A program made the translations under genes and the position numbers. Of a stretch of 64,000 nucleotides of DNA, positions 1 to 45,884 are shown one piece after another. Below the pieces are notes generated by a model. The model was not told the DNA's origin and made no database searches. It saw nothing but the letters and a program-made list of their open reading frames with translations. Positions within the stretch are counted from its first letter, which is position 1, and the number at the start of each line of letters is the position of its first letter. The stretch comes from Octopus sinensis (Eukaryota). The DNA is taken from assembly GCF_006345805.1 (NCBI RefSeq), contig NC_042997.1, positions 62,930,001 through 62,994,000 of the forward strand, written 5' to 3'.

Positions 1-186
1 GGACAAACAAGGAGAGACAAACGGATTAAGTCGATTACATCGACCCCAGTGCTTAACTGGTACTTATTTACATCGACCCCGAAAGGATGAAAGGCAAAGT
101 CGACCTCGGCAGAATTTGAACTCAGAACATAGCGGCAGACGAAATACTGCTAAGCATTTCGCCCGACGTGCTAACGTTTCTGCCAG

Positions 187-189
<3 letters not shown>
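1..189 (-). mobile_element. tRNA-derived SINE, type A (core GAGGTCGACTTTGCCTTTCATCCTTTCGGGGTCGAT), cut by window edge
   Basis: Reverse complement matches the SINE at 7740-7960 (head GAGCTGGCAGAAACGTTAGC, B-box-like GAGTTCAAATTC, same core). Confidence 0.85.
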
Positions 190-249
<60 letters not shown>

Positions 250-251
250 TA

Positions 252-296
<45 letters not shown>

Positions 297-474
297 CATA
301 CATTTGTATATATATATATATATATACATACATACATTGTATATATATATATATATATATATACATACATACATTTGTATATATATATATATATATATAT
401 ATACATACATACATTTGTATATATATATATTATATATATATACATACATACATTTGTATATATATATATATATA
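190..474. repeat. (TA)n microsatellite with 5 interspersed CATACATACATT(T)GT units
   Basis: Seen directly. A sixth unit occurs at 7229-7243, on the far side of the composite insertion. Confidence 0.95.
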
Positions 475-1044
475 TTTATAAAAATATGGTAAAGTAAAAA
501 AATTCACTTTACCACACACCGAACTTTTCAGAAATAGCAGCCAAAAATTTGGCTATTTCCTCAACTGCAAATAAAAGTCTCCAGACAATGCATACTCAGA
601 AAATAACCTACATACCGAATACTGCTTGGTCGAATTTATTAACAATTAATTAATTCTACCCCCTTTTTTGATGACAATATAATGCTTTTCTCTCCAAGAA
701 TTTGAACTACAGGTTTTACCTCTGTAGAAATGCACTACTCTATGACTCACGTGGGTGGACAGGGAGAATAACAGATCTCATTCGTATTTTTGGATTCGCT
801 AGTACTGGGTGTCTGGCATGGTTTGTCCGATAATTAAGTATTGAACTTTCACCACGTGAGTTTTTTCAGTGAAATATTGTTGTTGAATTTGTGTTAAAAC
901 CTGTTTAAATTGTCTTGTTAAAAAATTGTTTGAACTGTTGCTGGTTTTGAACCAGGAAAACTTTGTTTTCCCCTCCTCACGGAGGGGAACTGCTGTACAT
1001 TGAAACACACGAAAAAAAAAAAAACACACACATTCCACGGAAAA

Positions 1045-2703
1045 ATGAACAAAAATACTTGTTCAAAAATGTCAAAAAATGATGACGTAGTAGGTTTGCC
1101 TACACAAAAAAATGTGAAAATTGCTGAAGAAGCTAAAATTGCGGAAGATGTGACTTCCAATGAAGCTGTGAAAACAGCAAAAGGGAATGAAGGTTCGCCG
1201 GTTAAAAAAGCTGTGAAAACGGCTAAAGTCGCGGAAGGGTTGACTTCCAATGAAACTGTGAAAACAGCAAAAGCGAATGAAGGTTCGCCGATTAAAAAAG
1301 CTGTGAAAACGGCTAAAGTCGCGGAAGGGTTGACTTCCAACGAAGCTGAGAAATCAGCAAATGTGTGTGACGCTTCCAAACCAAGTGAAAAAACCAAGAT
1401 GTTTAACTTCGCTGCCGCTGCTGGTAGGAAGACAGAGGAAATAAAGATGGAGGAGGTGGAGTACGAAAAGTTTAAAAAAATGTTTAAAAAAGAGGGAAAT
1501 AACGCGATAGCTGCCCTCCCACAAACAATTAAAGAGGAAACCGAGAAAAGGACGATAATTTATAAATCCTATGTAATGAAAGAGAAGAAAATTGAAAGGA
1601 TAACCAAAGACCAAGCTGAGAAATGCCTTAAACCAGTGTGGAGTGATATGGACTACGTTACGTGGGGGAGAAAGTTTGCAACAATAGAGGTGCACTTCAG
1701 AAATGAAGAAACGGCCCAAAAACACTCCCTAACACCAATAAAGACGGAGGAAATAATATTATTACCCTCGTATTTAGGGAGGAGAACCTCAAAAATCAGA
1801 GTGGAGGACATGCCGCCACAGGTCGATGTGAGGTGGTTGCTTCCAGCACTGTTAATGGGGCTGGAAGAGAAAATAACAGTGATAAACATCAGAAGAGTGA
1901 TAAAGGAAAACTGGAGAGGACAAGCATTGCACGTGGTGGTGCAAGCGACCCCGGAGGCAATGGAGGAAGTTCCAGAAGGAATACAATTCGGGGAAGAAAT
2001 TAACTTGCGGGTGGTGGTGGAGGGGCGAAAGCCACGTTGCTACGGATGTGGCGAGATAGGTCACATCCGTATGGAGTGCCCCACCAGCAAGAAAGAGGAA
2101 GAAAGAAAAAAGACAGAAGAAGAAGCAGAGAAAAAAACGGAAGAAGAAGAAGAGAACGACTTCACAACGGTGAGGCGGAAGAAAACGCCAAAGAGAAAGA
2201 ATGCGGACACAAGCCCAACCAACCCTGGCACAATCAAAAAGAAATCCAACTCCCAGGGGGGAAAACCATCCCCACCCAACCACGGTTCCCCACAAAAAGA
2301 GAAGCCCCCACCCAATCCACCCCCACCCCTCAGTGCCGAGCATTACCCCTCCATTTCAACCCCCTCCTCGTGTTCCTCCCCATCATACTCCCCGGGGTCC
2401 TCCCCATCACCCCCACAAAGCCCACAAAAAAGCAGATTTACAGAAGCCCAAATAGTATATGCGGCAATAGACAAAAATAATGACCGACTTAAAAGTGGAA
2501 TGGGAAATATCCCAAGCGCAGAAAGGGTGAAAACCCACAGAAATCTACAAAAAAATGTAGAAATTTATAAATTGGACTTACGGAACTTTAACATGTTAAA
2601 TGCACAGTTCGCAGGGGACATAAAGGGTCCGCGACTCGAAGTGGACGAGTCACTGATTAATGCGGACTTCCCCGCCACGACCACCAAAGGAAAAACGGAA
2701 TAA
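1045..2703 (+). CDS. Tx1/L1-type ORF1 nucleic-acid-binding protein with CCHC zinc knuckle
   Basis: First ATG at 1045 (the ORF track starts at TTG 1000). Contains CYGCGEIGHIRMEC (CX2CX4HX4C), a basic/acidic region and a Pro/Ser-rich C-terminal part. Confidence 0.88.
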   Translation: MNKNTCSKMSKNDDVVGLPTQKNVKIAEEAKIAEDVTSNEAVKTAKGNEGSPVKKAVKTAKVAEGLTSNETVKTAKANEGSPIKKAVKTAKVAEGLTSNEAEKSANVCDASKPSEKTKMFNFAAAAGRKTEEIKMEEVEYEKFKKMFKKEGNNAIAALPQTIKEETEKRTIIYKSYVMKEKKIERITKDQAEKCLKPVWSDMDYVTWGRKFATIEVHFRNEETAQKHSLTPIKTEEIILLPSYLGRRTSKIRVEDMPPQVDVRWLLPALLMGLEEKITVINIRRVIKENWRGQALHVVVQATPEAMEEVPEGIQFGEEINLRVVVEGRKPRCYGCGEIGHIRMECPTSKKEEERKKTEEEAEKKTEEEEENDFTTVRRKKTPKRKNADTSPTNPGTIKKKSNSQGGKPSPPNHGSPQKEKPPPNPPPPLSAEHYPSISTPSSCSSPSYSPGSSPSPPQSPQKSRFTEAQIVYAAIDKNNDRLKSGMGNIPSAERVKTHRNLQKNVEIYKLDLRNFNMLNAQFAGDIKGPRLEVDESLINADFPATTTKGKTE

Positions 2704-2712
2704 AGGTAAGTA

Positions 2713-5700
2713 ATGTCTCATATTCGTGTAGGGTGTTTGAATGTGCGTGGCCTGATGCAGAGCTGGAAGCAAGGGCGCTTCCTAAATGACATCAGGTCAC
2801 GGGATTTAGATGTTGTCGTTGCCACAGAAACCCGGTTAAAGGGGCCAAGAGATCTGCTCCCGCTGTTCAACGGTTACGAGAGTGTCATCTCTCCGAACCC
2901 GTCGGTCAGCGGAAGCGGGGTGTTGGTCCTGTGTAAAAAGAACCGGGTTTCTGAGAAAAAGTTGATTTTTACGGATCCGGAAGGTAGGCTGGTCGTCATT
3001 GAGTTGACGTTCAGTAGCCGTAAGACAATCAGGCTGGTTGCGGTTTACGCTCCCCCCGGTAAGGGGAAAAGTGATTATTATCGGAACCTGGAGAAGTTTC
3101 TGAGTACATCGTGCCCAGTAGTAATGTTAGGGGACTTCAACACAATCTGCGATGTGCGGGTAGACTGTGAAGGCTCGCGAACAGACAGAAAAGGAAATAC
3201 TTGCTTCCTGGATCTACTAAGACGTTTTGAGCTGGTAGATCCATATAGACTGGAACATCCGGGCGCTCCACTGTGGACGTGGTCAAATAGCGACGGATCG
3301 GTAAAGTCATACATAGACAGGATATTAATTAGGAAGGTAGATAAGAACCTAGTTAAGAGTCCACAACTCCATATAGTCAGCTACAGTGACCACAAGATGG
3401 TCACCTGTAGGCTAGACGTAGATAAGATAACTAGAGGTCCTGGTTACTGGAAACTTAATACGTCCCTTTTGGCGATTAAGGAGTACAGGGACAGGATTAG
3501 GTTAATAATCCAGAGGGCCATGACCGGCTCCATTTGTAACAACAAATGGTGGTATGCCCTTAAGCGAGCCATAAAATATGAGTCCGTTAGATATAGTACT
3601 AATCTTGTAGCTAGAGAGGCTAGAGAGGTAACTACACTAGTTAAGGACTTAGAGGAAGCAATGCGAACTGGCAATGCAGACCAGGTGAAGGTCAAGAGAC
3701 TGGTTCTTAACCAGCACCTCGAAGCCAAACACATGGGTTGCATTGTCAGGGCTAGACAACGTACGATGGGGAGCGAAGGAATCAAGGCTGCAGGATGGGC
3801 CCGAGTGGTGGAAGCCCAACGTGGCAACGATGCTACAATTCGATCTCTGGCGAACCAACAAGGTAAGTTGACAGACGAGCCCGAGGAGATGTGTCAAGCT
3901 TTTCAGGACCACTTCGCCCAGCTTTTCGGGGGGAGCGGCGGACCGGATAGGGGGAGGGACCTTACGGACCTCCTCGACGGGCTGCCGCGCCTCTCGGGGC
4001 AGGATGCGAAGTGTAGTGAGGAGCCGATCACACCTGAGGAGGTAATAGAGGCCATGGCGGACTGCGGTGCGGGTAAGGCGCCGGGACTGGATGGTCTACC
4101 CTACGAGCTTTATAAAAGTATGCCGGACTTGTTCGGGGACTTACTGACGGGCGTCTACGCAAACTGGCAGCAGAATGGGTTTATCCCCAGATCTGTGCGC
4201 CGGGGAGTGGTGACGCTAGTCAGGAAGGACCAGAGCAAGGGGGACGTAATAGATAATTTCAGGCCCATCACTCTGCTTAACGCAGAGTTGAAGATTTTGG
4301 CCAAAGTGTTATCGAACAGATTGGCGCGTGTCGCGAATGGACTGATTGGGAAAGCGCAAACGTGCGCCGTACCGGGCAGAGCCATTCAGGATAATCTCCA
4401 TCTTATTAGATACACGATAGAGGGAATAAATAACGATCCCGGCAAGGGAGGGGCAGTGGTCCATTTAGACCAGTCTAAAGCGTTCGATAGGGTCGACCAT
4501 CACTACCTGGTGTCCGTTCTGGCTCAGTTCGGCCTAGGTCTTGGCTTCCTCAGGTGGATCATCGAAATGTATGACAACGCCGACTCGGTAGTTCAGGTGA
4601 ACGGCTTTCTTTCTAAGCCGTTCAAGGTCAAACGCTCGGTTCGCCAGGGATGTCCGCTCTCCCCGCTTTTGTATGTAGTGGCCCTGGAGCCGCTGCTGCG
4701 AAGACTGAGCGGCATCCCGAGGCAACCAGGACGTGATATGTCGGTTTCGGCGTACGCGGATGACATCACTATCATCGTGACTGAAGTGGACCACCTACGT
4801 AAAGTAGGCAAGGCCATAGAGGTTTACGAGACGGTGACAGGAGCAAAAGTTAATCGTGAAAAGTCGGTCGGCTTGCAACTCGGCACCTGGAGAGGCAAGT
4901 CGATGCCTCCAGACAGCGTCGTGGGACGTTGGACGGAGGGCCCGATTAAGTTGCTCGGGGTTTGGTTCGGTCCGGACCTCCAAATAGAGAAGAACTGGAG
5001 CGAGGTATCGAGCAAGGTGGCTGCAATAGTCAAGATTTGGTCTTGGCGGTGGTTATCCTTGAAAGGTAGGGCGGAGGTGGCCAATGTGTTTATAGCATCG
5101 GTGATCACCTACCGCCTTGCCGTCGTGCCTTGCCCGGATTCGTGGTTGATCAAGTTGGAGAGACAGCTCTTTCGCTTCTTGTGGAAGGGCTCGAAACCGC
5201 TTGTGAGACGCTCTGTCTGCTGTCAAAAACCGTTACAGGGTGGACTAGGGATGCCGTGGCTAATGATGCGCAGAAATGCGCTGAGGCTAAGGCACCTGTG
5301 GCTCCATCTGGGTAGTGAACGGGTGTGGTCTCCGCTGGCGAAACAGATGTTCCCCAGGTTCACCAGTTTCGGTGGCCGGGAGGACTGGTATAATCGCAGA
5401 TCGAAGTTGGGTACGTGGTATACGGAGTGTCGCAAGGCACTCCGACTATTCCGTCGCTCGGGTAATGCCTGCGGCAGTGGTTCTACCGCTGTGTTTTATA
5501 GAGGGTTTGTAGAGGCCGGTAACGATGATACGCTAGGGGAAGCCCTAGGTTTCGACGATAATCAGCTGGCCAGTCTGTTCCAAAGTACATTCGGGCCGAA
5601 GACACTGGATAATTTCCAGAAGTCTTTGGCTTGGCAGTGCTACCGAGGAGCCTTACCTGTTCGGGACAAGCTTGCAAGGCACGGTTGCCAAGTCAGCCCG

Positions 5701-6105
5701 ACCTGTACGAGGTGTGGGCGAGAACGGGAAACCGTCTCGCACGCGATCGTGCAGTGTTCGGGGGTGAAAGATATGTGGGATTGTGCCGAACAACTAATGT
5801 CAGGTGAACGAAGAGTACAGCTATCAGCCGAATCTATTGTAAAAATCAGCCCACCTGATTTCTTAACGAAAGAAGGTAAGTTTTGTTTTCTCGCCGTGGT
5901 TTCAACTGCGAAACAGGTAGTATGGAAGACAAGGATGAAAGGAATGATAACAGGCGACTTCATCTCTGGTTCAAGTCTGGTGGAATATTTTAAATTCCAC
6001 CTGAAAAGACATATAGAACTGGAGAGAAGGAGCCTGAGTAAGAAAGTGTTTGATGAAAGATGGAAAAATGTGGAGAGTAAAAGATCCCTCACAAATGTGA
6101 GATAG
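2713..6105 (+). CDS. Tx1-type ORF2: AP endonuclease, reverse transcriptase, C-terminal CCHC finger (1130 aa)
   Basis: EN motifs CLNVRGL, ATETRL, LGDFN, YIDRILI, YSDH. Linker GPGYWKLNTSLL. RT motifs KAPGLDG, FRPITLLN, LDQSKAFDRVDH, RQGCPLSP, YADD. C-terminal CTRC...H...C. Confidence 0.96.
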   Translation: MSHIRVGCLNVRGLMQSWKQGRFLNDIRSRDLDVVVATETRLKGPRDLLPLFNGYESVISPNPSVSGSGVLVLCKKNRVSEKKLIFTDPEGRLVVIELTFSSRKTIRLVAVYAPPGKGKSDYYRNLEKFLSTSCPVVMLGDFNTICDVRVDCEGSRTDRKGNTCFLDLLRRFELVDPYRLEHPGAPLWTWSNSDGSVKSYIDRILIRKVDKNLVKSPQLHIVSYSDHKMVTCRLDVDKITRGPGYWKLNTSLLAIKEYRDRIRLIIQRAMTGSICNNKWWYALKRAIKYESVRYSTNLVAREAREVTTLVKDLEEAMRTGNADQVKVKRLVLNQHLEAKHMGCIVRARQRTMGSEGIKAAGWARVVEAQRGNDATIRSLANQQGKLTDEPEEMCQAFQDHFAQLFGGSGGPDRGRDLTDLLDGLPRLSGQDAKCSEEPITPEEVIEAMADCGAGKAPGLDGLPYELYKSMPDLFGDLLTGVYANWQQNGFIPRSVRRGVVTLVRKDQSKGDVIDNFRPITLLNAELKILAKVLSNRLARVANGLIGKAQTCAVPGRAIQDNLHLIRYTIEGINNDPGKGGAVVHLDQSKAFDRVDHHYLVSVLAQFGLGLGFLRWIIEMYDNADSVVQVNGFLSKPFKVKRSVRQGCPLSPLLYVVALEPLLRRLSGIPRQPGRDMSVSAYADDITIIVTEVDHLRKVGKAIEVYETVTGAKVNREKSVGLQLGTWRGKSMPPDSVVGRWTEGPIKLLGVWFGPDLQIEKNWSEVSSKVAAIVKIWSWRWLSLKGRAEVANVFIASVITYRLAVVPCPDSWLIKLERQLFRFLWKGSKPLVRRSVCCQKPLQGGLGMPWLMMRRNALRLRHLWLHLGSERVWSPLAKQMFPRFTSFGGREDWYNRRSKLGTWYTECRKALRLFRRSGNACGSGSTAVFYRGFVEAGNDDTLGEALGFDDNQLASLFQSTFGPKTLDNFQKSLAWQCYRGALPVRDKLARHGCQVSPTCTRCGRERETVSHAIVQCSGVKDMWDCAEQLMSGERRVQLSAESIVKISPPDFLTKEGKFCFLAVVSTAKQVVWKTRMKGMITGDFISGSSLVEYFKFHLKRHIELERRSLSKKVFDERWKNVESKRSLTNVR

Positions 6106-6410
6106 GAAGAAAAAGGAAACCACAAGGCTAAGTGTCGTGGCGGGGAGCATGGGGTCGCGGACCCGCCCCACTGCATCTTGTAATTTTGTTAATTGTGTCT
6201 ATTGTGTAATCATTCGATTTATTATTCATTTTCGATTTTTAACCGACCCCAAATGTTCATAATTATTTTTTTCATCATTCGTGATTGTATGTGTACTCTA
6301 TGTCGCCCCTAGTGGGTAATAAAGAAATTGGCATGGTTTGTCCGATGTTACAGATATCGGACGGGTATGTTTGATTCTTAGTATTTTCAAATCTAAATCA
6401 GAAGAAATCT

Positions 6411-6470
6411 CTGAGCTGATGAAGGAAAAGTGGCGTTTTACCCACAAATCCAGAAACAGACTGTCCTCGG
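6411..6470 (+). ncRNA. Type I hammerhead ribozyme motif, copy 1
   Basis: Stem I CTGAG/CTCGG, core CTGATGA, stem II GGA/TCC plus GTGG/CCAC, GAAA, stem III ACAG-A-CTGT, GUC triplet at 6463-6465. Confidence 0.75.
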
Positions 6471-6972
6471 GTATCGTATATGGATGTGATCTTTCACTGT
6501 TTTTCCCTTATACCTATGTGAGTTATTTTCTGAGTATGCATTGTCTGGAGACTTTTATTTGCAGTTGAGGAAATAGCCAAATTTTTGGCTGCTATTTCTG
6601 AAAAGTTCGGTGTGTGGTAAAGTGAATTTTTTTACTTTACCATATTTTTATAAATTAATACTTCAAATATACCGTAAATGGTCTTTACATACCGAATACT
6701 GCTTGGTCGAATTTATTAACAATTAATTAATTCTACCCCCTTTTTTGATGACAATATAATGCTTTTCTCTCCAAGAATTTGAACTACAGGTTTTACCTCT
6801 GTAGAAATGCACTACTCTATGACTCACGTGGGTGGACAGGGAGAATAACAGATCTCATTCGTATTTTTGGATTCGCTAGTACTGGGTGTCTGGCATGGTT
6901 TGTCCGATGTTACAGATATCGGACGGGTATGTTTGATTCTTAGTATTTTCAAATCTAAATCAGAAGAAATCT

Positions 6973-7032
6973 CTGAGCTGATGAAGGAAAAGTGGCGTTT
7001 TACCCACAAATCCAGAAACAGACTGTCCTCGG
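6973..7032 (+). ncRNA. Type I hammerhead ribozyme motif, copy 2
   Basis: Identical to copy 1, 562 nt downstream. GUC at 7025-7027. Confidence 0.75.
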
Positions 7033-7240
7033 GTATCGTATATGGATGTGATCTTTCACTGTTTTTCCCTTATACCTATCTGAGTTATTTTCTGAGTATG
7101 TATTGTCTGGAGACTTTTATTTGCAGTTGAGGAAATAGCCAAATTTTTGGCTGCTATTTCTGAAAAGTTCGGTGTGTGGTAAAGTGAATTTTTTTACTTT
7201 ACCATATTTTTATATATATATATATATACATACATACATT

Positions 7241-7284
<44 letters not shown>

Positions 7285-7432
7285 CACACACACATAAGAA
7301 TAGACATATTAAAAGAGGTCCATGGGAAAACTCATTTATATAATAATAGGATTGGGAACCAATGATGGGAACCATTGGTTTAAATTGTATCCAAAATTAC
7401 ATGTTATAAAATACGCAATAAGAAAAGTGAAA

Positions 7433-7739: not shown

Positions 7740-7960
7740 GGCGGCAGAACCGTAAGCACGCCGGGCAAAATGCGTAACCGTATTTCGTCTGCCGTTACGT
7801 TCTGAGTTCAAATTCCGCCGAGGTCGACTTTGCCTTTCGTCCTTTCGGGGTCGATAAATTAAGTACCAGTTACGCACTGGGGTCGATGTAATCGACTTAA
7901 TTCGTTTGTCTGTCCTTGTTTGTCCCCTCTATGTTTAGCCCCTTGTGGGTAATAAAGAAA
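7740..7960 (+). mobile_element. tRNA-derived SINE type A with Tx1-like 3' tail
   Basis: Head and core as at 1-189. Tail CTCTATGTTTAGCCCCTTGTGGGTAATAAAGAAA. Confidence 0.88.
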
Positions 7961-8830
7961 CAGAAATTTTAACATTAGCATTTTACTGAATCAGCCATGA
8001 ATTAATATGGTATATATATATACTGACAATTAAAACTTAGTCAAACTATCCAGTGATGGAGTAGTCACTACTGATCAGCTTATTATTTTCGAGCCACGCT
8101 AGACTAGCAAAGTGATCAAGCTTCACTGTGGGGCGGTTACCTCACCTGTCAGTATATAGAAATGTGCTTTCTTCAGGCTCTAAGGGTTTTTAATTCTTAT
8201 TTCTAGCGATACAGGTGCTACCCGGCACCCTTAGTCACATTTAGTCACAACTGAATTTTTTCTTTATATATATATATAGTAATAATGTGTTTTTTTAATG
8301 GCACAACAATGTACTATAATAACAACAATGGACTATAATAACTGGTGTAATTTAATCATCCATAGTCTGATATAATATTTCGAAATATAAAATTTCCTTC
8401 TTCAGATATCCATAGGAATTGATCGAGTCACTGCTACAATCAGTTTTCCAATGGCTTTTTTCTTTTTTCACCCTTCTTCCTTCTTCCTGTTTTCCTATTT
8501 TTTCATTGAGGCCGATGAAAGAAATTTGGAAGCTATTCTCATAGACAGACTAGGGCCCCAAATCAACAACAGGCTGGAGCTTGGCAGTCACTATACTCTC
8601 TAGCTACATTGGATGCGTGTAATTTTTTTTATGATATGCTCGTGTATTATTTATAAAAAAAGGGGAAGAGAAAAAAGAGAAAAAGGGAAGGAGGAGGAAA
8701 AGAGGAAACTGCACGTATAATTCATAACTTAGAGGCAACGATACTGATGTGCCAGCCTGAGACATTATTACTGTTTATCATTATTGTTTACAAACAATAC
8801 GCAATGCTTCAAGCAAACTACAATACTCTC

Positions 8831-10121: not shown

Positions 10122-11103
10122 CTGCTGAGGTTTATTGAAGAGGTACGACCAAGTTGCATTAGACAATACTTGGAAAGTTCTACGCCGCAGCAGGGAATCT
10201 AAATCTACGGTTTTGTACTGAAATTCTCGACCACATGCTTATGCACACCACCGAAGAAATGAATTAATACGCTCTATGCTGTTTATATAACTTTGACAAT
10301 ATCTAGTCTCATAAATGCAACTTCCATTTATCCAATCAGTGAGTGGTTGCAACTTTTCGCGAATAATTGACTCCTTCAGGAATGCTTAAAATATTTCTTG
10401 ATTTAAATATCGTTGCGATATTACCTGTCTCCTAAATCCTTTAAACCTTTTCTGAGCTTAGAAAATAATGTCATTTGTAATTGACTTTAGCTAAATTGTA
10501 TAAATCAATGAACACAATGATGGTCAATGGTATTTACTTTATTCATATACTGTATATAGCCGATGATGGGTGTCATTAAATTAAATTCCTAACATCAATG
10601 ATAGCTTTAAATATCTAAATTGCTTCTGAGAATTGAGTTTTTCAGAATATCTCTTAGTGTTTGATGCATTTTCGATTTAATGCTTTTGACTTTTCTCAGT
10701 TACTCATTTCTTTTCGTTGTCTCTTTCAACAGAATACTGCTCCATAAAAACAGATAAAGAATTGGTTATCTAGTTTTCAATTAAGAATATATATCTCCTG
10801 AGGCTACATAATTTTTAGATAAAATATGTATAGAATTTTTAATTTCTATCGCCTTCATAACGTTATTGTGGTTTTAGCATTTTCAATGAAGTTATCAAAC
10901 AGCGTGTCTCAGTTAAATGACGTAAAATAAAAAGGATTTATCAAAAGATTTAGTAAGCCACACACATTGGTAAATAGATAAAAGAGACTGCTTCAAGTGA
11001 GAAACAGTAGAGAGATAGTGAGAGACTGTGATAAAGAAGCGGTGACAGAGGGGTAACGAGAAGAGGTAGAGCGCGAGAGTGAAAATGAGAAAGAGAGAAT
11101 AGC

Positions 11104-14392: not shown

Positions 14393-14425
<33 letters not shown>

Positions 14426-14427
<2 letters not shown>

Positions 14428-14985
14428 CAATAAAGGGTTTAGCAACGAATTGCCTTACCATATACCAAATTTAGAAATAGCAGTCAAAGAGTTATAGCTA
14501 TTTCTTCTACTAAAAAGGGAGATCTCAGTAAAAACAGCAATTGGAAGGCAGACACAAACAGGTAAGAGAGAATGAATTGACGGCAATCTATCATACAATT
14601 TTAAGTTATCTACGGACGTACGTTTCGAAATCAAGTTTTTAGGAAAGTATAAGAATTAAATATTAAATAATTCTATCTCACCAAAACTTCTTTTCTCTTC
14701 AGCGTAGAATACTATAATCATAAATGATTATATATTGAATTTTGAGATACTAGAAGGCACCAACTCAACTCAGTATCAGAGCGAGCTAGAATCCGCAACT
14801 AGTATCACCAAATTCAATGTGTGAATGAAAAGATTGTGTCACCAGGTAAGGCAATTCGTTGCTAAACCCTTTATTGCTTAGTATTACTTAAATTTTCCTC
14901 GAATGAGGCTTTTACATGCCGAAGACTACTTGGTGTAATTGATAATTATTCCAAATTAATTAATTTAACCCTTCATTATTACGGA

Positions 14986-14990
<5 letters not shown>
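14426..14990. mobile_element. HHR-bearing inverted-repeat element, distant relative of the Tx1 target repeat
   Basis: Perfect 34-bp inverted repeat at 14426-14459 and 14845-14878. HHR on minus strand. GAAATAGC...GCTATTTC hairpin and a spacer-plus-core segment (14880-14980) resemble 6564-6602 and 6655-6740. Confidence 0.7.
14609..14708 (-). ncRNA. Type I hammerhead ribozyme motif with long stem II loop
   Basis: Minus strand: TCTACG-CTGAAGA-GAAA...TTTC-GAAAC-GTAC-GTC-CGTAGA. Stem I is 6 bp, 10.1-11.1 is G-C, stem III is palindromic ACGTACGT. Confidence 0.75.
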
Positions 14991-15061: not shown

Positions 15062-16510
15062 TAAAACTTAGATAAACTTAGATATGTTTCGACCAAAGAT
15101 TGGTCCAGGCCATGTCTAACTTAATAGCACCACCTGATAGGATTATTTGAATCCTGTTTAAGTCAAGTTTTGTTTATGGTCCATCCAAGTAGTGAGTTTT
15201 TGTTGGGTGAGTTTTATGGGTGAGTTTTATGGGTGGCTTATCTGGTATTCTTTGAAGGAATCTATCCAGACTCCGTTTAATGTTGATGGGATCCTTTTCC
15301 TATTTGATCTCTTTTCGGGACAATGTTAAATAGGGCAGGGCCTGTTGAGGAAAAGAAATTATGTGCATGTATGCTGTGATCTTGAATTGGGCAGGGGACG
15401 TATGGCTCGTGGTCCCAGTCTTGGATGAACCTTGAAGCTAATGTTCAGGTCGTTTGGGCAAAGTTGGCGGTATATTCTCCACATCGTACAAATGATGTAC
15501 CGCTTACGGCGACGCTGGAGAGAGTAGAGTTTCAAGGCTTTAAGGCGATCCCAATAATCGAGAGCAGCCATGCCTTCAATTCGTTTAGTGAGTTCCCTCT
15601 GGGGTGATTCAAACCTCGAGATGTTTTGTCTTGTATGGGGAGACCACAGTGGGCAGCAGTATTCGAGGTGTGGCCGTACGAAGGAGGAGAAAAGTGGTAT
15701 GATGACACCTTGTTCTCTGGACCGGAAAGTTCTTAAGATCCAGGAACTCATCCTACGAGCTATATCGACCTTCTTGTTGATGTGTGCACTCCAACTGAGA
15801 TCGTCATCAACAATTACACCCAGGTCTCTGATATTGTTAGAGGCTGTGAGCGGTTCCCCTGAAGGAAGAGAGTACGGCTGTTTTAGTGAGGAATTTCTTC
15901 CAAAATGCATCAGCTCAAATTTTCCCTCGTTCAGTTGCATTTTGTTTCTGTCTGCCCATTGACGCACAGCATATAGATCAGACTGGAGTTGAGTTCGGTC
16001 TGCTTCTTCATTGACGATTTGCTGGAGCTTAGTGTCATCAGCAAATATTTTCACTTTGCAGTAATGTACGACACTGGAAAGGTCGTTTATGTAAATTATG
16101 AGGAGTAGCGGACCCAAGACAGTCCCCTGGGGGATACCGCTTGTGACTTTTGCTGAGATTGAGTGGACTCCATCAACTACAACATGTTGTGTTCTATTCG
16201 CCAGGAAATACTTAATCCAGTGTAGAACTTTTCCACGGATTCCAACATTTGCCAATTTTGAGAGTAAGATATTATGGTCTACCCTGTCGAACGCTTTACT
16301 GAAGTCAAGATATATGACATCAGAGTTCGAACCCGTTCCCAAGGCTTTGAGTACATCTTCATTGTGGTGTAAGAGCTGTGTTAGACAGTCCCTGCCACAG
16401 CGAAAGCCATGCTGATTTGCATTTAGGAGTTTGTGGGTCTCCAGGAAGTCAGCTATCCTTGATCTTAACACTCTTTCAAACACTTTTGCTTTGGGTACAG
16501 TTTCCTCCAT
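15062..16510 (-). mobile_element. 5'-truncated CR1-group LINE (RT domain and 3' end)
   Basis: ORF 15359-16525 has QHGFR, YLDFSKAFDRVDH, GIPQGTVLGPLL, FADDTKL, PHLEYC. A frameshifted C-terminus continues toward about 15200. 3' tail is (TATCTAAGTT)2. Confidence 0.9.
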
Positions 16511-17905
16511 CCAGTTCCAAACCAAAGTATTGCTCAGTTAATACACAGTGGGATCGGACAGTGAGTCAATTGATTACGAAGGGAACATTTTTGTTTCTGC
16601 TTACGCATCTCATCAATTGCATTAATGTTCTAAATCAAGCACTTTACGAAATTTCAGTGATGGTAGGTATGAAGCATCGGAGTTGTGATTCATGAAAACG
16701 AAGTTTGGGTATCATATGTGGATGTGGAGATCATGAAATTTATAGTGCCGTAGAAATGTTCTGTTCTGCAATGATTAAGCAGTCGTTACTGCTTAGCAAG
16801 CGGCTTGATCTGAGATGGTGTTTTGACATAGAAACAATTACACCGTATAAAAAATCACGATTGCTTTTTAAAACAGTCATTAAATGTTATCGTGATATAA
16901 TTACATTCTATCTAATGGAAGCCAACTATTGGCTAATTCTTCGAATTCATGAAGATTTTTTTGTGTTTCTATACATTTATTTCTTCGTTATTTTCTCATT
17001 ATTAATATTAAAAATATTTCAATTTCATTTCTCTTTACTTATAGGAAAGGTTAATGACTTTATATATGAATTTGATCTATGAAATATATTAATTATTTCG
17101 TGATGCCTTTGGAAAGCTGTCATGTATATATACGTATTCCTGTAAGTATGTGTGCTTCAGTGATTAAATGTGTATGCATGAATAAAAGTGGATGCAAATT
17201 AATTACGATATACAAAAATATGCCCTGGAAGATAGAACCACTTCTGGCATGAATGACCATGGGATTGCACCTAGAAAGTTACACTCCGAGGCACAAATCC
17301 AGGCAATGAGCGTGGGATTGTACCTAAAAACTTACAGTTCGTGGCACAAGTCTGAGTGAGGCTGTTTACGGAAGACCAACATATATATATATATAAAATG
17401 AAAGAGGAATTCGTCTGCATCCTTTCAAGAAAGGTTAACCTTTGTTGTATAAGCTTATAAAGCCCTGAGATTCTGCCCATATAGAATAAAATTTTGTTGC
17501 AGATAACTTTTAATGTATTCTTTGGTCTATCTTTGTTGAGGGTACGTGTATGTTTGTACTTTTACGCGTAAGTGGTGTTCTTAGCTAAACGTTTAGCTTG
17601 GGGAGACGGTCGTTGTTTTCTCATATAAATAAATCAAATAAATCAAAAAATAGTTTTTTTATGGTATTTAATGGATCATTCTTCAAAAACAATGTTATAT
17701 CTCTTAACTTTGTTTTCTTTCACGTTACGACACATATATAAACAAGTGCAAATATGTATGTATACAGGTAGAAATTATATATATATATATACATATATAC
17801 ATATATATATACATATATACATATATATACATATATACATATAATACATATATACATATATATATATATATACATATATATACATATATATATATTATAT
17901 ACATA

Positions 17906-25850: not shown

Positions 25851-26071
25851 ATATCATTTTCTCCAAATAAAATACCTCCATTCCATTGGTTTACTCATTA
25901 CTCGATGTGTAAATTCGTTTCCAGAAATCCCAGTAAATTGCAATAACTAATTGTTGTAGGTAGCTAAATCAGTTTTGCCATCTAGTTTTATCCTACATTT
26001 CTTAGGCAGAACCATGTAGCGATCAATTTTGGGTGCCATACTTTCGGTGTCGATATAATAAATACGAAATG

Positions 26072-26282
26072 AAGGTGGCGAGCTGACAATCGTTACCACG
26101 CGGGACGCAATGCTTAGCGGTATTTTGCCCATCGCTACGTGCTGAGTTCAAATTTCGCCGAGGTCGACTTTGCCTTTCATCCTTTCGGGGTCGATGAATT
26201 AAGTACCAGTGAAACAGTGAGGTCTATGTAATCGACTAGTCCCCTCCCACCATATTTCAGGCCTTGTGCCTATAGTAGAAAA
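26072..26282 (+). mobile_element. SINE type A, tail variant GGCCTTGTGCCTATAGTAGAA
   Basis: Head and core homology with 7740-7960. Confidence 0.85.
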
Positions 26283-29200
26283 ATATAATAAATACTAAAT
26301 AAATACAAGTTTTATTTTAAGTCATTACAATAATTCACGTGAGAGGTATGGTTCAAATAGCAATTTACATTTATTCACCCGAAGAATCTCGCGTTTGAAT
26401 CTAGTTGTAGGCGTACACTTGCAGATTTTTGCACAAAGGTACATCGCATAAAAGATTAATTTTCATGCAGGTATTCATCTTACGTAATATGAGTAAAAAT
26501 GCTAAGCCTCTATATTCGGTTTCACAGTCTGCTAGAAAGAGTAGCCAAATGTTTTTTTTTTAAATAACACTATACGATCTTCAGAGATAAGCCATATCGA
26601 ATAATGCTGTCAAAGATAAAAAAAAAGTGGAATGATAATAGGTTTGCTTGTTCAGAACTGATGTCGAGCTGACCAACAACAACTGCTGCAGCGGCAGGCG
26701 TATATGACCAAATAGCTAATTAAATCACCCTCTCTCACGAAACTATTGGTATGGGCTGGCGCAGTTTATCACAGTAAGCTGCGGATGTTTTGTTAGCTTG
26801 CAAAGACTGGCTCACATTTTACCATTGCTTTGTGCTGGACAACAATAAACCACTTCAGTGTTTTCTTTCTAAGGGGTTTTGATATAAAATGGCATAATAA
26901 CACCCAGAAGCCGTGTCAGACCTTTTATATTGTAAAGTGGTGCTTTTCAAAATGAATGACATGAATCAGTGACAAATATTTCAGTTGCTCTAACATATTG
27001 GCTAGTAAAACATATTTTACTTTATTTATCGTTTTATAATAGCTATTTCCTTCGGCTTTTTCTGTATTGTTGAAACCTAGAAATTACAAACTACTTTCTT
27101 GTCCTTTCTACATTTTAGAATCAATAAATCACACTTAATATGGGAATGTCCTATCAATGAAAAGTCATTTCAATACAACTATCTAATAATAAACATGGAC
27201 AATTTATGGTCAAGGATTAATAACTACATTTTTTATAAGATAGTAAAAATAGTATTAGCTTGGTATTAACTGATACAAATGGCTGGCTATATTGAATTGC
27301 TAATTTTGCATTCAAGTTGCTTTGGAATGCTTCCAGAATCATTACGGTTGACCTTATTGTTCAAATGTCCTAACATTAATGCTCTGGATACTTGCGTAAT
27401 TGTATTATTGACTATTTGCTACTTAGGTAAAAGATCACAAATTATTTAGTAGAGGAGAATGACATTGTGTGAATTGTATGTCTTCCTCAAGAGCATTAGC
27501 AATATATGTGATGAGAAATGTCTTCAACGGGGATTCGAAACTGGTTTGTGGGATAGGCATAGCAAATTCTTTTCAACGTCATGAAAACATATTAAGTGTA
27601 AAATTGATATGTAGAAAATCAAGCGATTTGTAAGTTGCATTCACACAACTATCTTCTATCTCATGGGTTAGAGAAGATTTCATTTCTGTTACATGTATAA
27701 CACTTCACAAAATATATAAACGTCACATTATCTTATTTTCGTACAGCTCTAAAATTCTAGGGTTGGGTCTAAAGTGATCGCCAAAGCGTAAGCTTTCAGT
27801 TCTGAACATTACATATGCTTATATGTATAACCAGTGGATAAAATGTATCTCTTTGTTATGTATAACAGACAGAAGCGGAAAGCAGAGTTGCTCTCCTTTA
27901 TTTCAAAATGTGACTTAGTCACTCGATAGAATATAGATCGTTAAAATAAATATCGGCCGGAAGTATTGGGGGCAGTAAGCTCACTAACATTCTTGAATGC
28001 AATGCATTATCATTTCTGTTGTCCAACAACTGAAATTAGTAAAAGACTAAAAATAAATATATTTTCAACATTATACCGAGGAGACGACATTACGATACTA
28101 TTAATAATTTTGTTGAGCTCAAAAAGCCGACAAAGAAATCGGTATATCAGGAATTGAGGGACAAAACGAGGCTAAATACTGACTGATGCTCTATCAAGTG
28201 AGTCTTAATAATTTTGATGTCACGTTACACTGGAGATAAAAGAAATCATTAGCGTACTTCACGTGGAAAGTAAAAAGGGAAAAATTCTATTTTAATGCTA
28301 TAACTTTTGAAGAATATAGAAAACTATTGCTTAGTCTTATTAATTATTACATCTTATTAATTATACATATCCTGACATTTAACTACATCCAGCGGTGAGC
28401 CTCTAGCTCGGGAGTTCAGCAGTTTTGGGGCGTGTGGAGTAAATTTTGGTTACCATTACTCCTAGATCCGCTCCTGTCCGGAGTGTTAGTTCCTGTCAAG
28501 GTTCAACTTATGGGTCAAACATCAGAGGATGGTCCCTTTGCTAGGACATACAAAACTCGCTGGAAGGTTGGTTCGCAGACATGTGTCATACAAGCTCTGA
28601 TGTATGTGGACATGCCCTAATGTCACAAGTAGCTATTTCTTCTGACTAAGGGTTAGATTTGCCTTATGCCTCAAGGGTAAAACGCTTGCAAAGTAAAATG
28701 TAAAGAAACCAGCTGAATGCAGCAGGAAGCCATTGCTTTATTTTTACCAAGAAAAATCCTAAATCTTCGGACTCTGCAAGGAGGTCCATGATCACCGATG
28801 TCTTAGGTGAGCACATAAAAAAGTGTGTCTAGCAAGATTATGAATAACATATTTTCATGATGATCAAGCAATTAATATGTATTTTCGGAAACAATGACTT
28901 ACATTTTAAAAAATCTGAGTACATACCCAGATGCTCTCCTTTGTAAAATTTGGTAACTACTACTTTAATATTTCAGTTAATTAGCAGCGCTTTATGATAA
29001 AGTTACATACGCACTGTGGCCGAGTGGTTAAGAAATACTTTAGTCAGTTACGGGCATCACGGGCAAGTATTTTCCCCATAAGTTCGGGAAAACTTAACCT
29101 TGTGTGTGAAAGCAGTAGGCATAAAGAAACTGAATGGGAGCCCATCAGATGGATTGTGCCAATAACTTAAAGCACTAACTTAGTCCGCTTCAGAATTAAT

Positions 29201-37510: not shown

Positions 37511-38900
37511 CTATCCATATGGTATATTTATATTTGACATTTTAAATTTGGTTGCGTGTCTACATAAGTTCATCAGCTCACTTCTTTGATTCAAAGAATT
37601 ATTGTCTTTGAATAAAATATACAGTTTCTCTAATAGGCAAAGATTGCATTTAAAATTATTCATGTGTGCTCCATGCCTGTATGGTGCCGCTCTGTCCAGA
37701 ATGCTCCATGTCACGTTGAAAGGTGGGGTTTCCTTTTCTTTTAGTTCCCAGACATATTTTGATAGGCTGGTCCTCTTCCTATTCTCTGGGTATCTAAATG
37801 AATTTTTATGCGAATAAAATCATGTTTTAAACGAATTTTCTGAAGCCCCTGTATATGTCTTGTATTCCGATGAGCCTTCTATTTGTACCTTGGCTCTATA
37901 AACCACTCCTTTCACTAGACATTTCCCTTCTAACGGACAGGAGTTTTCATTTTTGAAATTGCATTTCTTAATGGGCTCGGCACCATGTTTAATCTCAATC
38001 AGATTCCTATTATGCTGGCTAATGTAAGAGGCGAAATTTCTGCAACAAGAATAGCTAACCTTCAGGGTTCTTCTATTAAATATCCCATAGAATTTATGGC
38101 CCTGCTTAAAATGCTTAGAGACAAATCTCAAAAATTCCTTACCTATATTAGTCTTTACGGCCAAATTGAAAGCCGGGTTGAACCACAAAACTTTGCTGGT
38201 CCTAGTTCTTCGTGCAGCATTATTATCAGCATTAAGCTGGCTGTATTGGATCTTCTCAGAGAATCCACTATTCTTTAATGCGCTATCGTAATAAGGTGCA
38301 GCATTATGGAATGCTGCCTCGTCCGAAGAAATTGAAAATATTCTTCTGCCTATATTGCTGACTAAGTTCCTAAGGATAACTGGTGGATGGTTCGAATCTT
38401 TGCTAATATACGATAGCTTTTCATTGGGCTTACGGAAAGGTTTAAATCTATCCGACCTTACATTAAAATTTACGTCTAAAAAATCTACACTATTTAGGTT
38501 AGCATCTATTGTAACCCGTAAGCCCATCCTTTGAAAGAAAGCAATAACGTCCTTCCTAAGTCTATCTGATTCATGGCCATTTAGATTATGCGTGGCTATA
38601 AGGCCGTCATCCCTATATAAACCTGCATCTATAAATGGGAATTCTACTTTCAGATTATGAAGAATAAAGACTCCTATGAGCATACATAACTAAGCCCCGT
38701 CGTATGCCCCCATCGGTACATGGAAAAGAGAATCCTCAGTCTTCTTAATCCAGGTGGAATCCTCGAAAAAAAGAAACGATTTCCTCGCATGTATAATAAT
38801 ATCAATTTCCGACCTATCGATGCTGCCATACTGCCTGGTGAAGTCCAATGCCCTTAGGAGCAACGTCCTAGATTCGACGGGTAAAAGTCAATAATGTCGA
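37511..38900 (-). mobile_element. 5'-truncated Penelope-like element, RT (YRDDG type) plus C-terminal GIY-YIG
   Basis: DIIDFYPS/...VPMGAYDGA*LCMLIG...LYRDDGL...CPLEGKC...VVY...YTG...FKT*...CNLCLLEK...CRH. One frameshift and two point stops. Confidence 0.9.
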
Positions 38901-45469: not shown

Positions 45470-45884
45470 TTATTATATAGAAGGAGCTTCTACAGGACTA
45501 GAACTGTTTCATTCAAGAGAAATCTTCAGGAAGCTATGAAGTCATAAAAGAATCATCCATAACATTTATTAAAATAAAAGTATTCAGAACCCAGAATAAC
45601 ATATAACAAAACCAATTTGCAAACATTTACATTCCCATATAACAGTTAAGAACATCACCATTATTGTATTACGCGTGCGCGTAAGTGTTTGTTCGACTAG
45701 GTGCTACTAGCTTAATTACGGACGACTCAAGTTAGAGAAGGGGAGCGTATTATACACAAGGTTTAGGTTTTACAGAATTACAACCCCCTAAAAATCCCCT
45801 GCGTATTATACTCAAGGGCGGACTATACTCGAGGATTTACGTGAAACAGTTCTAGTCCTGTAGAAGCTCCTTCTATATAATAAA
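45469..45884. mobile_element. HHR-repeat inverted arms enclosing a 306-bp copy of 42961-43266
   Basis: 43-bp perfect inverted repeat at 45469-45511 and 45842-45884. HHR on minus strand at 45485-45535. Insert at 45536-45841. Confidence 0.85.

What the first reader, a model, noticed from the sequence alone, without database searches (positions are those of the whole stretch)
475..7214. Intact Tx1 retrotransposon inserted into a hammerhead-ribozyme tandem repeat: candidate new site-specific target class
Seen: the element (832-6328) is flanked by a perfect 18-bp TSD. It interrupts one unit of a 562-bp tandem repeat, and the second unit shows the uninterrupted site (6891-6908). Established: many Tx1-clade elements are sequence-specific (Keno in U2 snRNA, Mutsu in 5S rDNA, Dewa in tRNA-array spacers, Kibi/Koshi in microsatellites, Xenopus Tx1L/Tx2L in internal repeats of Tx1D/Tx2D). 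Inference: this family may specifically parasitise an HHR-bearing PLE or retrozyme repeat, a target type I do not know to be described. One insertion cannot prove specificity.
Basis: partly seen in the sequence, partly recalled or inferred. Interest (0 to 1): 0.9.

Follow-up and report, generated by a model that had tools for sequence, protein, structure and literature searches.

The report
Young LINE nested in ribozyme-bearing repeat
A complete, apparently still functional 5.5-kb LINE retrotransposon of the L1/Tx1 group sits inside a small repeat that carries a hammerhead-ribozyme motif; the anatomy is real, but one copy cannot show that the LINE aims at this repeat, and LINEs of this group landing in other mobile elements are already well known.

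Summary
A 5,497-bp element (832-6328) with two open reading frames is flanked by a perfect 18-bp duplication. A paralogous unit shows the empty site at 6891-6908. With the insert removed, the host is a 562-bp repeat of 1.9 copies at 99% identity.

Two corrections:
- An inverted 131-nt copy of the unit's 3' end lies at 477-607, and the whole structure sits in a (TA)n-rich array. This matches how Penelope-like elements (PLEs) insert.
- Rfam finds no hammerhead, even at E<=10. My own descriptor scan does find one (0.005 hits expected per 64 kb). Two other hammerhead-like motifs in the window keep every stem I and stem III pair through compensatory changes, and one lies in a homologous element.

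The interpretation, site-specific parasitism of a ribozyme repeat, could not be tested. No other copy exists in the window or in any searchable collection. Indirect evidence leans slightly against strict specificity:
- A SINE whose 3' tail ends at the same point as the LINE's sits in an unrelated AT-rich site.
- Relatives about 40% identical have varied flanks.

Tx1 families that target DNA transposons, LTR elements and satellites are already published. Verdict: an ordinary nested insertion until shown otherwise, a new member of a known kind, of modest interest.

The parts
185..476 (.). Left flank: (TA)n / ATACATACATACATTTG(TA)n minisatellite into which the host repeat is inserted
   Evidence: TRF period 2 and 38-39
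477..607 (-). Inverted, 5'-truncated copy of the host unit: reverse complement of the unit's last 131 nt
   Evidence: 0 of 131 mismatches to 6522-6652; inverted repeats I1 and I2; blastn
609..831 (+). Host unit 1, upstream part. It lacks the first ~33 nt of a full unit.
   Evidence: 100% identical to 6686-6908
814..831 (+). Left copy of the 18-bp target-site duplication TGGCATGGTTTGTCCGAT
832..6328 (+). Full-length L1/Tx1-group non-LTR retrotransposon, 5,497 bp. 5' UTR 832-1044, 3' UTR 6106-6328. Ends ...GGGTAATAAAGAAAT with no poly(A) tail. 48% GC against 35% for the window.
   Evidence: The 5' motif TTTCACCACG lies at about the same distance from the 5' end as in relatives.
1045..2703 (+). 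ORF1, 552 aa, with a CCHC zinc knuckle and five 45-nt (15-aa) internal repeats at 1132-1401
   Evidence: zf-CCHC E=0.003, below the Pfam cut-off.
2713..6105 (+). ORF2, 1130 aa: AP-type endonuclease (aa 22-227), reverse transcriptase (511-751, YADD motif), zf-RVT (970-1022)
   Evidence: Matches human L1 ORF2p 8sxt over aa 2-863, E=6e-69. EN alignment.
6329..6346 (+). Right copy of the 18-bp target-site duplication
6347..6652 (+). Host unit 1, downstream part
   Evidence: 99% identical to 6909-7214
6410..6471 (+). Hammerhead-like motif H1, copy 1. Stem I is UCUGAG/CUCGGG. The core is CUGAUGA ... GAAA. Stem II is GGA/UCC above an A.A mismatch. Stem III is ACAG/CUGU. The predicted cut is GUC|C after 6465, 137 nt downstream of the LINE's 3' end.
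   Evidence: descriptor scan; pair table; no Rfam hit
6653..7214 (+). Host unit 2, a complete 562-bp unit
6891..6908 (+). Unoccupied (empty) target site in unit 2, unit positions 239-256. Its 3' half GTCCGAT, together with ATCGGAC 9 nt downstream, forms a 7-bp inverted repeat.
   Evidence: hairpin in the fold
6972..7033 (+). Hammerhead-like motif H1, copy 2. Predicted cut after 7027. The interval 6466-7027 is an uninterrupted 562-nt ribozyme-to-ribozyme monomer.
   Evidence: the monomer fold has z = -8.2
7215..7290 (.). Right flank: the same (TA)n / TACATACATACATTTG array, in the same direct orientation as the left flank

Best explanation
This is a two-step nest of retroelements.

Step 1 (shown by anatomy; mechanism inferred from the PLE literature). 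A 562-bp non-coding element that carries a type-I hammerhead-like motif inserted into a (TA)n-rich array. It inserted in the way Penelope-like elements and their non-autonomous derivatives (animal 'non-LTR retrozymes') do. The result is an inverted 5'-truncated piece (477-607), then a slightly 5'-truncated unit, then a full unit.

Step 2 (shown). A full-length L1/Tx1-group LINE later inserted into unit 1 by target-primed reverse transcription. It has the same orientation as the ribozyme strand and created an 18-bp duplication. The implied first nick is on the bottom strand at 5'-CCATGCCA/GACACC. The second nick is 18 bp away on the top strand, after GTCCGAT.

Both events are recent. The host units differ at 2 of 529 positions, the TSD is perfect, and both ORFs are open.

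My committed reading is that this is an ordinary nested insertion in a repeat-rich genome. Any target preference is unproven. I put about 25-30% on a real preference for this repeat family.
For: TSD and empty site.

LINE domains and catalytic residues.

Host architecture. It matches the published PLE hallmarks: partial tandems, an adjacent inverted 5'-truncated copy, (TA)n insertion bias, and an HHR in the pLTR (PMC8557442).

HHR-like motif:
- The descriptor scan expects 0.005 hits per 64 kb and finds 4 hits at 3 independent loci.
- All 6 stem I pairs and all 4 stem III pairs are kept across H1, H2 and H3, with compensatory changes.
- The H3 element at 14425-14990(-) is homologous to the host's 3' region (nhmmer E=7e-4).
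- H3 has the same build, and its predicted cleavage site lies 181 nt from the element's 3' end, against 187 nt in the host.

The 562-nt monomer RNA is unusually structured, z = -8.2.

Context and evidence against strict targeting:
- About 66% of the O. vulgaris genome is repeats, so a random insertion usually lands in one. 13 L1-Tx1 families with 421 recent insertions are reported there (PMC13282606).
- The SINE at 7740-7961 shares the LINE's terminal ~50 nt and ends at the same point, yet lies in a different, AT-rich site with TSD AATTTTCACATT/AATTTTAACATT.
- Relatives have diverse flanks.
Against: For a real target preference:
- Many Tx1-clade families are target-specific, including for other transposons.
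- The nick site is not AT-rich although the genome is 35% GC.
- The insertion is precise and full-length, with no poly(A) tail.
- One subfamily of relatives (L005, L008) forms head-to-tail arrays separated by the same 14-mer, which suggests re-use of a target.
- Another relative (L003) also sits in a tandem repeat, with an 18-bp TSD.

Weaknesses of the host identification:
- Rfam does not recognise the HHR.
- The motif has an A.A mismatch at positions 10.1/11.1 and a weak stem III.
- Self-cleavage is untested.
Confidence: 0.6

Rival explanations
1. This LINE family is sequence-specific, or strongly preferential, for a site in the HHR-bearing 562-bp retrozyme-like repeat. It uses a multi-copy selfish element as a safe haven, as Tx1L does with Tx1D.
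For: Target specificity is common in the Tx1 clade and includes other TEs. The nick site GTC|TGGCATGG is GC-balanced in a 35%-GC genome. The insertion is precise and full-length, with a long TSD and no poly(A). It has the same orientation as the ribozyme strand. Some relatives show re-used targets or tandem-repeat hosts.
Against: There is one copy only. The identical second site 562 bp away is empty. The SINE with the matching tail is elsewhere. Relatives' flanks differ between subfamilies. With about two thirds of such a genome being repeats, landing in some repeat is expected by chance.
Confidence: 0.27
2. The host is a MITE or foldback-type DNA transposon with ~131-146-nt terminal inverted repeats and an internal tandem duplication. 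On this view the hammerhead-like motif is a chance match. The case would then be a close analogue of Tx1L in the internal repeats of Tx1D.
For: Inverted arms 477-607 and 7084-7214 bracket the structure at 99% identity. Rfam finds no hammerhead. A TA-rich flank could hide a TA duplication.
Against: The third arm (6522-6652) and the 33-nt inter-unit linker need an extra ad hoc duplication. The descriptor hit is about 200-fold above expectation per window. Pairing is kept with compensatory changes in a homologous element that has the same inverted-piece-plus-unit build in another (TA)n tract. This build is the documented PLE signature.
Confidence: 0.07
3. Assembly artefact. On this view the two-unit arrangement, or the LINE's placement, results from collapse or mis-joining of repeats.
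For: PLE-type tandem/inverted structures are known to trouble assemblies (PMC8557442). No reads were available here.
Against: The 18-bp duplication and the exact resumption of unit sequence on both sides are what a real TPRT insertion produces. A mis-join would not create them.
Confidence: 0.03

Closest known systems
Xenopus Tx1L inserted in Tx1D, a non-autonomous piggyBac DNA transposon (Christensen et al. 2000, as cited in PMC4494074)
   Same: A LINE of the L1/Tx1 group sitting inside a repeat unit of another multi-copy, non-autonomous mobile element, flanked by a target duplication.
   Different: There, specificity rests on many copies and on endonuclease biochemistry; here there is one copy. 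There the host is a DNA transposon; here it is an HHR-bearing, PLE-style retroelement.
Crocodilian Tx1-Mar (targets Mariner-N4_AMi), Tx1-9_AMi (Harbinger), Tx1-8_Crp and Tx1-4_AMi (LTR retrotransposons), with SINEU sharing the target (PMC4494074)
   Same: These show that 'Tx1 targets another transposon' is an established category, and that a partner SINE then shares the target.
   Different: Here the SINE with the LINE-like tail does not share the LINE's insertion site. No PLE or retrozyme target is listed in that survey.
Animal non-LTR retrozymes and HHR-bearing pLTRs of Penelope-like elements (PMC7229834; PMC8557442; bioRxiv 10.64898/2026.07.22.740005)
   Same: The host matches on several points: low GC (36%), tandem units each with a type-I hammerhead-like motif, a weak helix III, an adjacent inverted 5'-truncated copy, insertion into (TA)n, and a highly structured monomer RNA.
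   Different: The unit is 562 bp against the typical ~150-450 bp. There are only 1.9 units. There is an A.A mismatch at the base of helix II. No Rfam hit. No self-cleavage or circular-RNA data.
Recently active L1-Tx1 families of Octopus vulgaris (13 families, 421 insertions, 2.29 Mb; PMC13282606)
   Same: The mean of ~5.4 kb per insertion fits a 5.5-kb full-length young element. The window's SINE and repeat content look octopus-like, but that is my inference and is unverified.
   Different: That paper gives no target analysis. I could not show that the window comes from that species.

Membership tests
L1/Tx1-group non-LTR retrotransposon | N-terminal AP-type endonuclease with its catalytic residues | tested here: met
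   Exo_endo_phos E=8.6e-14. The alignment to L1-EN chains keeps the N, E, Y, D-x-N, D and D-H positions.
L1/Tx1-group non-LTR retrotransposon | Reverse transcriptase homologous to L1 ORF2p, followed by a Cys/His domain | tested here: met
   RVT_1 E=3e-31 and zf-RVT E=1.4e-9. Human L1 ORF2p 8sxt E=6e-69 over aa 2-863. YADD motif in the translation.
L1/Tx1-group non-LTR retrotransposon | Insertion by TPRT leaving a target-site duplication | tested here: met
   Perfect 18-bp TSD plus a paralogous empty site.
Tx1 clade proper (as opposed to the L1 clade) | The RT domain groups with Tx1L, Keno and similar elements in a phylogeny (RTclass1 / Repbase references) | not testable with these tools
   No Tx1 reference sequences were available. 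The support is only circumstantial. ORF1 has a CCHC knuckle and no Transposase_22 hit, which is consistent with Tx1-type ORF1 (PMC5203782). One distant named homologue is labelled 'Transposon TX1'.
Target-specific Tx1 family | Independent copies share the same flanking sequence and position | not testable with these tools
   One copy in the window. No close relatives in the collections.
Hammerhead ribozyme, type I | Conserved core (CUGANGA, GAAA, UH cleavage site) framed by helices I, II and III | tested here: met
   The descriptor scan hits 6416-6465 and 6978-7027, with 0.005 hits expected per 64 kb. All stem I and stem III pairs are kept, with compensatory changes, across three motifs.
Hammerhead ribozyme, type I | Recognition by the curated covariance models (Rfam Hammerhead families) | tested here: not met
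   No hit at the gathering score in the window, at E<=1 on 9 kb, or at E<=10 on 354 nt. The two other motifs in the window are missed as well.
Hammerhead ribozyme, type I | Self-cleavage | not testable with these tools
   This needs in vitro transcription. The A.A mismatch at 10.1/11.1 and the 2-4-bp helix III leave activity open; it may require a dimer.
Animal non-LTR retrozyme / non-autonomous PLE derivative | Non-coding, low-GC units in head-to-tail tandem, each with an HHR | tested here: met
   Period 562, 1.9 copies, 99%. 35.6% GC. One motif per unit. The only ORF is an 87-aa one within the repeat.
Animal non-LTR retrozyme / non-autonomous PLE derivative | PLE-style insertion: partial tandem, adjacent inverted 5'-truncated copy, microsatellite target | tested here: met
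   Inverted 131-nt copy at 477-607 and (TA)n on both sides. The criteria come from PMC8557442.
Animal non-LTR retrozyme / non-autonomous PLE derivative | Multi-copy family, 3'-end similarity to an autonomous PLE, circular RNA | tested here: inconclusive
   One related element in the window (14425-14990). No autonomous partner was identified: PLE-like ORFs picked by eye gave no Pfam hit. No RNA data.
MITE / foldback DNA transposon | Terminal inverted repeats at both ends with a target duplication | tested here: inconclusive
   Inverted arms exist. However, a third arm and a tandem unit lie inside, and a TSD cannot be read within (TA)n.

The most novel reading that the evidence does not exclude
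The LINE family is dedicated to this retrozyme family and exploits its ribozyme. The LINE is inserted in the sense orientation 88 nt upstream of the hammerhead motif. A read-through or co-transcript would therefore be cut at GUC|C, 137 nt past the LINE's 3' end. That would give a poly(A)-less RNA with a defined 3' end that carries target sequence (TGGCATGGTTTGTCCGAT...). This tail could anneal to the nicked target at the next retrozyme copy. It would be a 3'-end counterpart to the ribozyme processing of R2 co-transcripts (from my own knowledge). The retrozyme itself would keep an intact 562-nt ribozyme-to-ribozyme monomer (6466-7027).
Probability: 0.1. Interest if true: 0.7.

Novelty: new member of a known kind. 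Interest (0 to 1): 0.3.

Why it matters
If other copies showed the same junction, this would add PLE-derived, ribozyme-bearing repeats to the list of Tx1 targets. It would also offer a natural case of one retroelement class living on another's non-autonomous offspring, possibly using its ribozyme.

As it stands, the locus is a clean, young example of nested retroelements. It is useful for annotation in three ways:
- It gives a full-length, apparently coding-competent L1/Tx1 element.
- It documents a PLE-style hammerhead-like repeat that Rfam models miss.
- It hints that this LINE lineage supplies the 3' tails of the abundant SINEs in this genome.

Tried and rejected
Rfam. I searched at the gathering score and at permissive E-values. 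There was no hammerhead hit; the only hits were microsatellite-driven miRNA matches, which I dismissed.

Other copies.
- blastn and tblastn of the LINE, and blastn of the host unit, against the window found none at high identity.
- The protein search gave a best hit of 58% identity, on a 3-kb GC-rich contig that ends before the 3' junction.
- The exact-sequence look-up of ORF2 found nothing.
- Scans of metagenome contigs with the 25-nt target, and of metagenome, genome and viral contigs with a LINE/SINE tail pattern, all gave 0 hits.

Relatives from ENA sample ERZ21867824 (~40% aa identity). I examined eight 3' junctions in six loci (L003-L008). The flanks vary, and none has a hammerhead-like motif. 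They are too distant to decide this family's behaviour.

A second LINE-HHR adjacency in the window looked like a pattern: an RT ORF at 15359-16525(-) and motif H3 at 14702-14615(-). I rejected it. There the HHR element sits in its own (TA)n tract beside the LINE tail, and the LINE is not inserted in it.

MITE reading of the host: considered, and judged less likely (see rivals).

ARAGORN found no tRNA-like head in the SINE. Two ORFs that looked PLE-like by eye gave no Pfam hit. A literature search for a Tx1-to-PLE/retrozyme target found nothing.
Full report
**1. Observation**

The 18-mer TGGCATGGTTTGTCCGAT occurs exactly three times in the window, at 814-831, 6329-6346 and 6891-6908. Dinucleotide shuffles give no expected matches. 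The first two copies bracket a 5,497-bp insert at 832-6328.

The sequence left of the insert (609-831) is 100% identical to 6686-6908. The sequence right of it (6329-6628) is 99% identical to 6891-7190. The two matches overlap by exactly the 18-mer. So the next unit shows the empty site and the 18-mer is a true target-site duplication.

With the flanks joined, TRF reports period 562, 1.9 copies and 99% matches. The two units differ at 2 of 529 positions. This part of the finding is confirmed.

**2. The insert**

ORF1 (1045-2703, 552 aa) has a CCHC knuckle and five 15-aa repeats. ORF2 (2713-6105, 1130 aa) is open. It carries an AP-type endonuclease, a reverse transcriptase with YADD, and a zf-RVT domain.

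ORF2 aligns with human L1 ORF2p over residues 2-863 (8sxt, E=6e-69). The endonuclease catalytic positions are retained.

The 5' end carries TTTCACCACG about 16 nt in. Related elements carry the same motif at a similar distance from their 5' ends, so the copy is full-length. The 3' end is ...GGGTAATAAAGAAAT, with no poly(A).

The element therefore belongs to the L1/Tx1 group. Assignment to the Tx1 clade proper could not be tested, because no reference sequences were available. The zinc-knuckle ORF1 fits Tx1-type ORF1 proteins (PMC5203782). L1-Tx1 families with about 5.4 kb per recent insertion are reported in Octopus vulgaris (PMC13282606). The octopus origin of the window is my inference from its SINE and repeat content, not a tested fact.

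**3. The host**

Positions 477-607 are the exact reverse complement of 6522-6652, the last 131 nt of the unit (0 mismatches). The layout is:

- an inverted 5'-truncated piece,
- unit 1, which lacks the first ~33 nt,
- a complete unit 2.

The whole structure lies in one (TA)n / TACATACATACATTTG array that continues in the same orientation on both sides.

This is the published signature of Penelope-like element insertions: partial tandems forming pseudo-LTRs, an adjacent inverted 5'-truncated copy, (TA)n bias, and hammerheads in the pLTR (PMC8557442). The unit has no meaningful ORF, 36% GC and an unusually stable RNA fold. For the 562-nt monomer 6466-7027 the MFE is -172 kcal/mol against -126 +/- 5.7 for shuffles (z = -8.2).

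**4. The hammerhead**

Rfam gives nothing: not at the gathering score on the whole window, not at E<=1 on 9 kb, and not at E<=10 on 354 nt.

I wrote a descriptor requiring helix I of 5 bp or more, CUGANGA, helix II of 3 bp or more, GAAA, helix III of 3 bp or more including A15.1-U16.1, and H17 not G. It hits 6416-6465 and 6978-7027. It also hits two independent places on the minus strand, at 45491-45529 (H2) and 14615-14702 (H3). The expectation in Markov-2 simulations is 0.005 hits per 64 kb on both strands.

Across H1, H2 and H3, all six helix I pairs and all four helix III pairs stay paired, with several changes on both sides of a pair.

The H3 element (14425-14990, minus strand) is homologous to the host unit's 3' region (nhmmer E=7e-4). 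It has the same build, an inverted piece plus a unit in a (TA)n tract. Its predicted cleavage site lies 181 nt from its 3' end, against 187 nt in the host.

I therefore accept a hammerhead-like motif of the weak-helix-III kind found in animals (PMC7229834). The caveats are an A.A mismatch at 10.1/11.1 and no test of activity. The host is best called a retrozyme-like, non-autonomous PLE-type element.

**5. Is the LINE site-specific?**

This is the core of the interpretation, and I could not test it.

- The window has one copy.
- The protein collection has nothing above 58% identity.
- The exact ORF2 is not on record.
- Four DNA scans of public collections found nothing.

Indirect points in favour:

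- Target specificity is common in the Tx1 clade.
- The inferred first nick, bottom strand CCATGCCA/GACACC, is not AT-rich although the genome is 35% GC.
- The insertion is precise and lies in the ribozyme's orientation.

Indirect points against:

- The SINE at 7740-7961 shares the LINE's last ~50 nt and ends at the same point (...GTGGGTAATAAAGAAA). It lies in an unrelated AT-rich site with its own TSD, AATTTTCACATT/AATTTTAACATT. If this LINE lineage drives that SINE, its machinery is not tied to one site.
- In one other genome (ENA ERZ21867824), relatives about 40% identical have different 3' flanks in different subfamilies. One subfamily does form tandem arrays separated by a constant 14-mer, and another copy sits in a 465-bp tandem repeat with an 18-bp TSD.
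- With about two thirds of such a genome being repeats, landing in some repeat is the default outcome.

I put 25-30% on a real preference.

**6. Comparison with the known**

Tx1 families are already documented in piggyBac (Tx1D), Mariner and Harbinger DNA transposons, LTR retrotransposons, satellites, snRNA and 5S genes, and microsatellites (PMC4494074). A LINE of this group inside another mobile element is therefore a known kind of event. Only the PLE/retrozyme identity of the host would be new, and I found no paper describing that.

**7. Most novel reading not excluded**

The LINE lies 88 nt upstream of hammerhead copy 1, on the same strand. A read-through transcript would be cut 137 nt past the LINE's end. 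That would give a defined, target-bearing 3' end for the next round of target-primed reverse transcription. The retrozyme would keep an intact 562-nt monomer. This is speculation; I give it about 10%.

**8. Verdict**

The anatomy is confirmed and refined. Specificity cannot be judged from the data available. The finding is a new member of a known kind, of modest interest (0.3).

Noticed in passing
window 7740-7961 (+), compared with 6279-6328: A SINE copy has a last ~50 nt that matches the LINE's 3' end and stops at the same point (...GCCCCT[T/A]GTGGGTAATAAAGAAA). It has its own ~12-bp TSD in an AT-rich site. This suggests that the L1/Tx1 lineage supplies the tail of, and may mobilise, an abundant SINE family. 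A second copy of the same SINE lies inverted at 1-184.
   Followed up: partly
window 26070-26330 (+); loci L003-L008: Another SINE copy has a different tail containing GGCCTTGTGCC. The same motif lies near the 3' end of the related LINEs from ENA sample ERZ21867824 (...AAGGCCTTGTGCCT...AAATAAA). SINE tail classes may therefore track different LINEs of this lineage.
   Followed up: partly
window 14425-14990 (-): A second hammerhead-bearing, PLE-style element with motif H3 at 14702-14615. Helix III is the palindrome ACGUACGU (dimer type) and helix II carries a ~60-nt insertion. It is flanked by ~34-nt inverted ends, sits in its own (TA)n tract, and is homologous to the 3' region of the 562-bp unit. 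It lies next to the 3' end of a different LINE (RT ORF 15359-16525, minus strand).
   Followed up: partly
window 45491-45529 (-): A third hammerhead-like motif (H2). It folds as a canonical monomer with a U.U mismatch at the base of helix II. It lies ~20 nt from a (TA)n tract. Rfam misses it as well.
   Followed up: partly
L005 3733-3747 and 10169-10183; L008 2735-2749 and 9162-9176: Related LINEs form head-to-tail arrays on two different contigs. The copies are separated by the same 14-mer, GCAGACTAGAAGGT, and the last copy in L005 is followed by it. This is the pattern expected from repeated insertion into a regenerated target. L004 has a similar TSD, GCAGCTGTAGTAAG.
   Followed up: partly
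L003 3549-3566 and 10180-10197; repeat 10166-11060: A related LINE (~40% aa identity to the window's ORF2) also sits in a tandem repeat, of period 465. It has an 18-bp TSD, GAATCCTTCATTTGTTGA, and an empty site in the next unit. No hammerhead-like motif is present there.
   Followed up: partly
window 6901-6923 (also 6339-6361): The 3' half of the target, GTCCGAT, together with ATCGGAC 9 nt downstream, forms a 7-bp inverted repeat. The inferred second-strand nick falls at the edge of this hairpin-capable site.
   Followed up: no
window 832-6328 against the whole window: The LINE is 48% GC in a 35% GC window. Its closest database relative (58% aa identity, L001) is from a GC-rich contig of assembly GCA_024449705.1, organism unknown to me.
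   Followed up: no
window 37820-38683 (-) and 47361-47861 (+): Two ORFs that looked like PLE fragments by eye gave no Pfam hit. They remain unidentified.
   Followed up: partly
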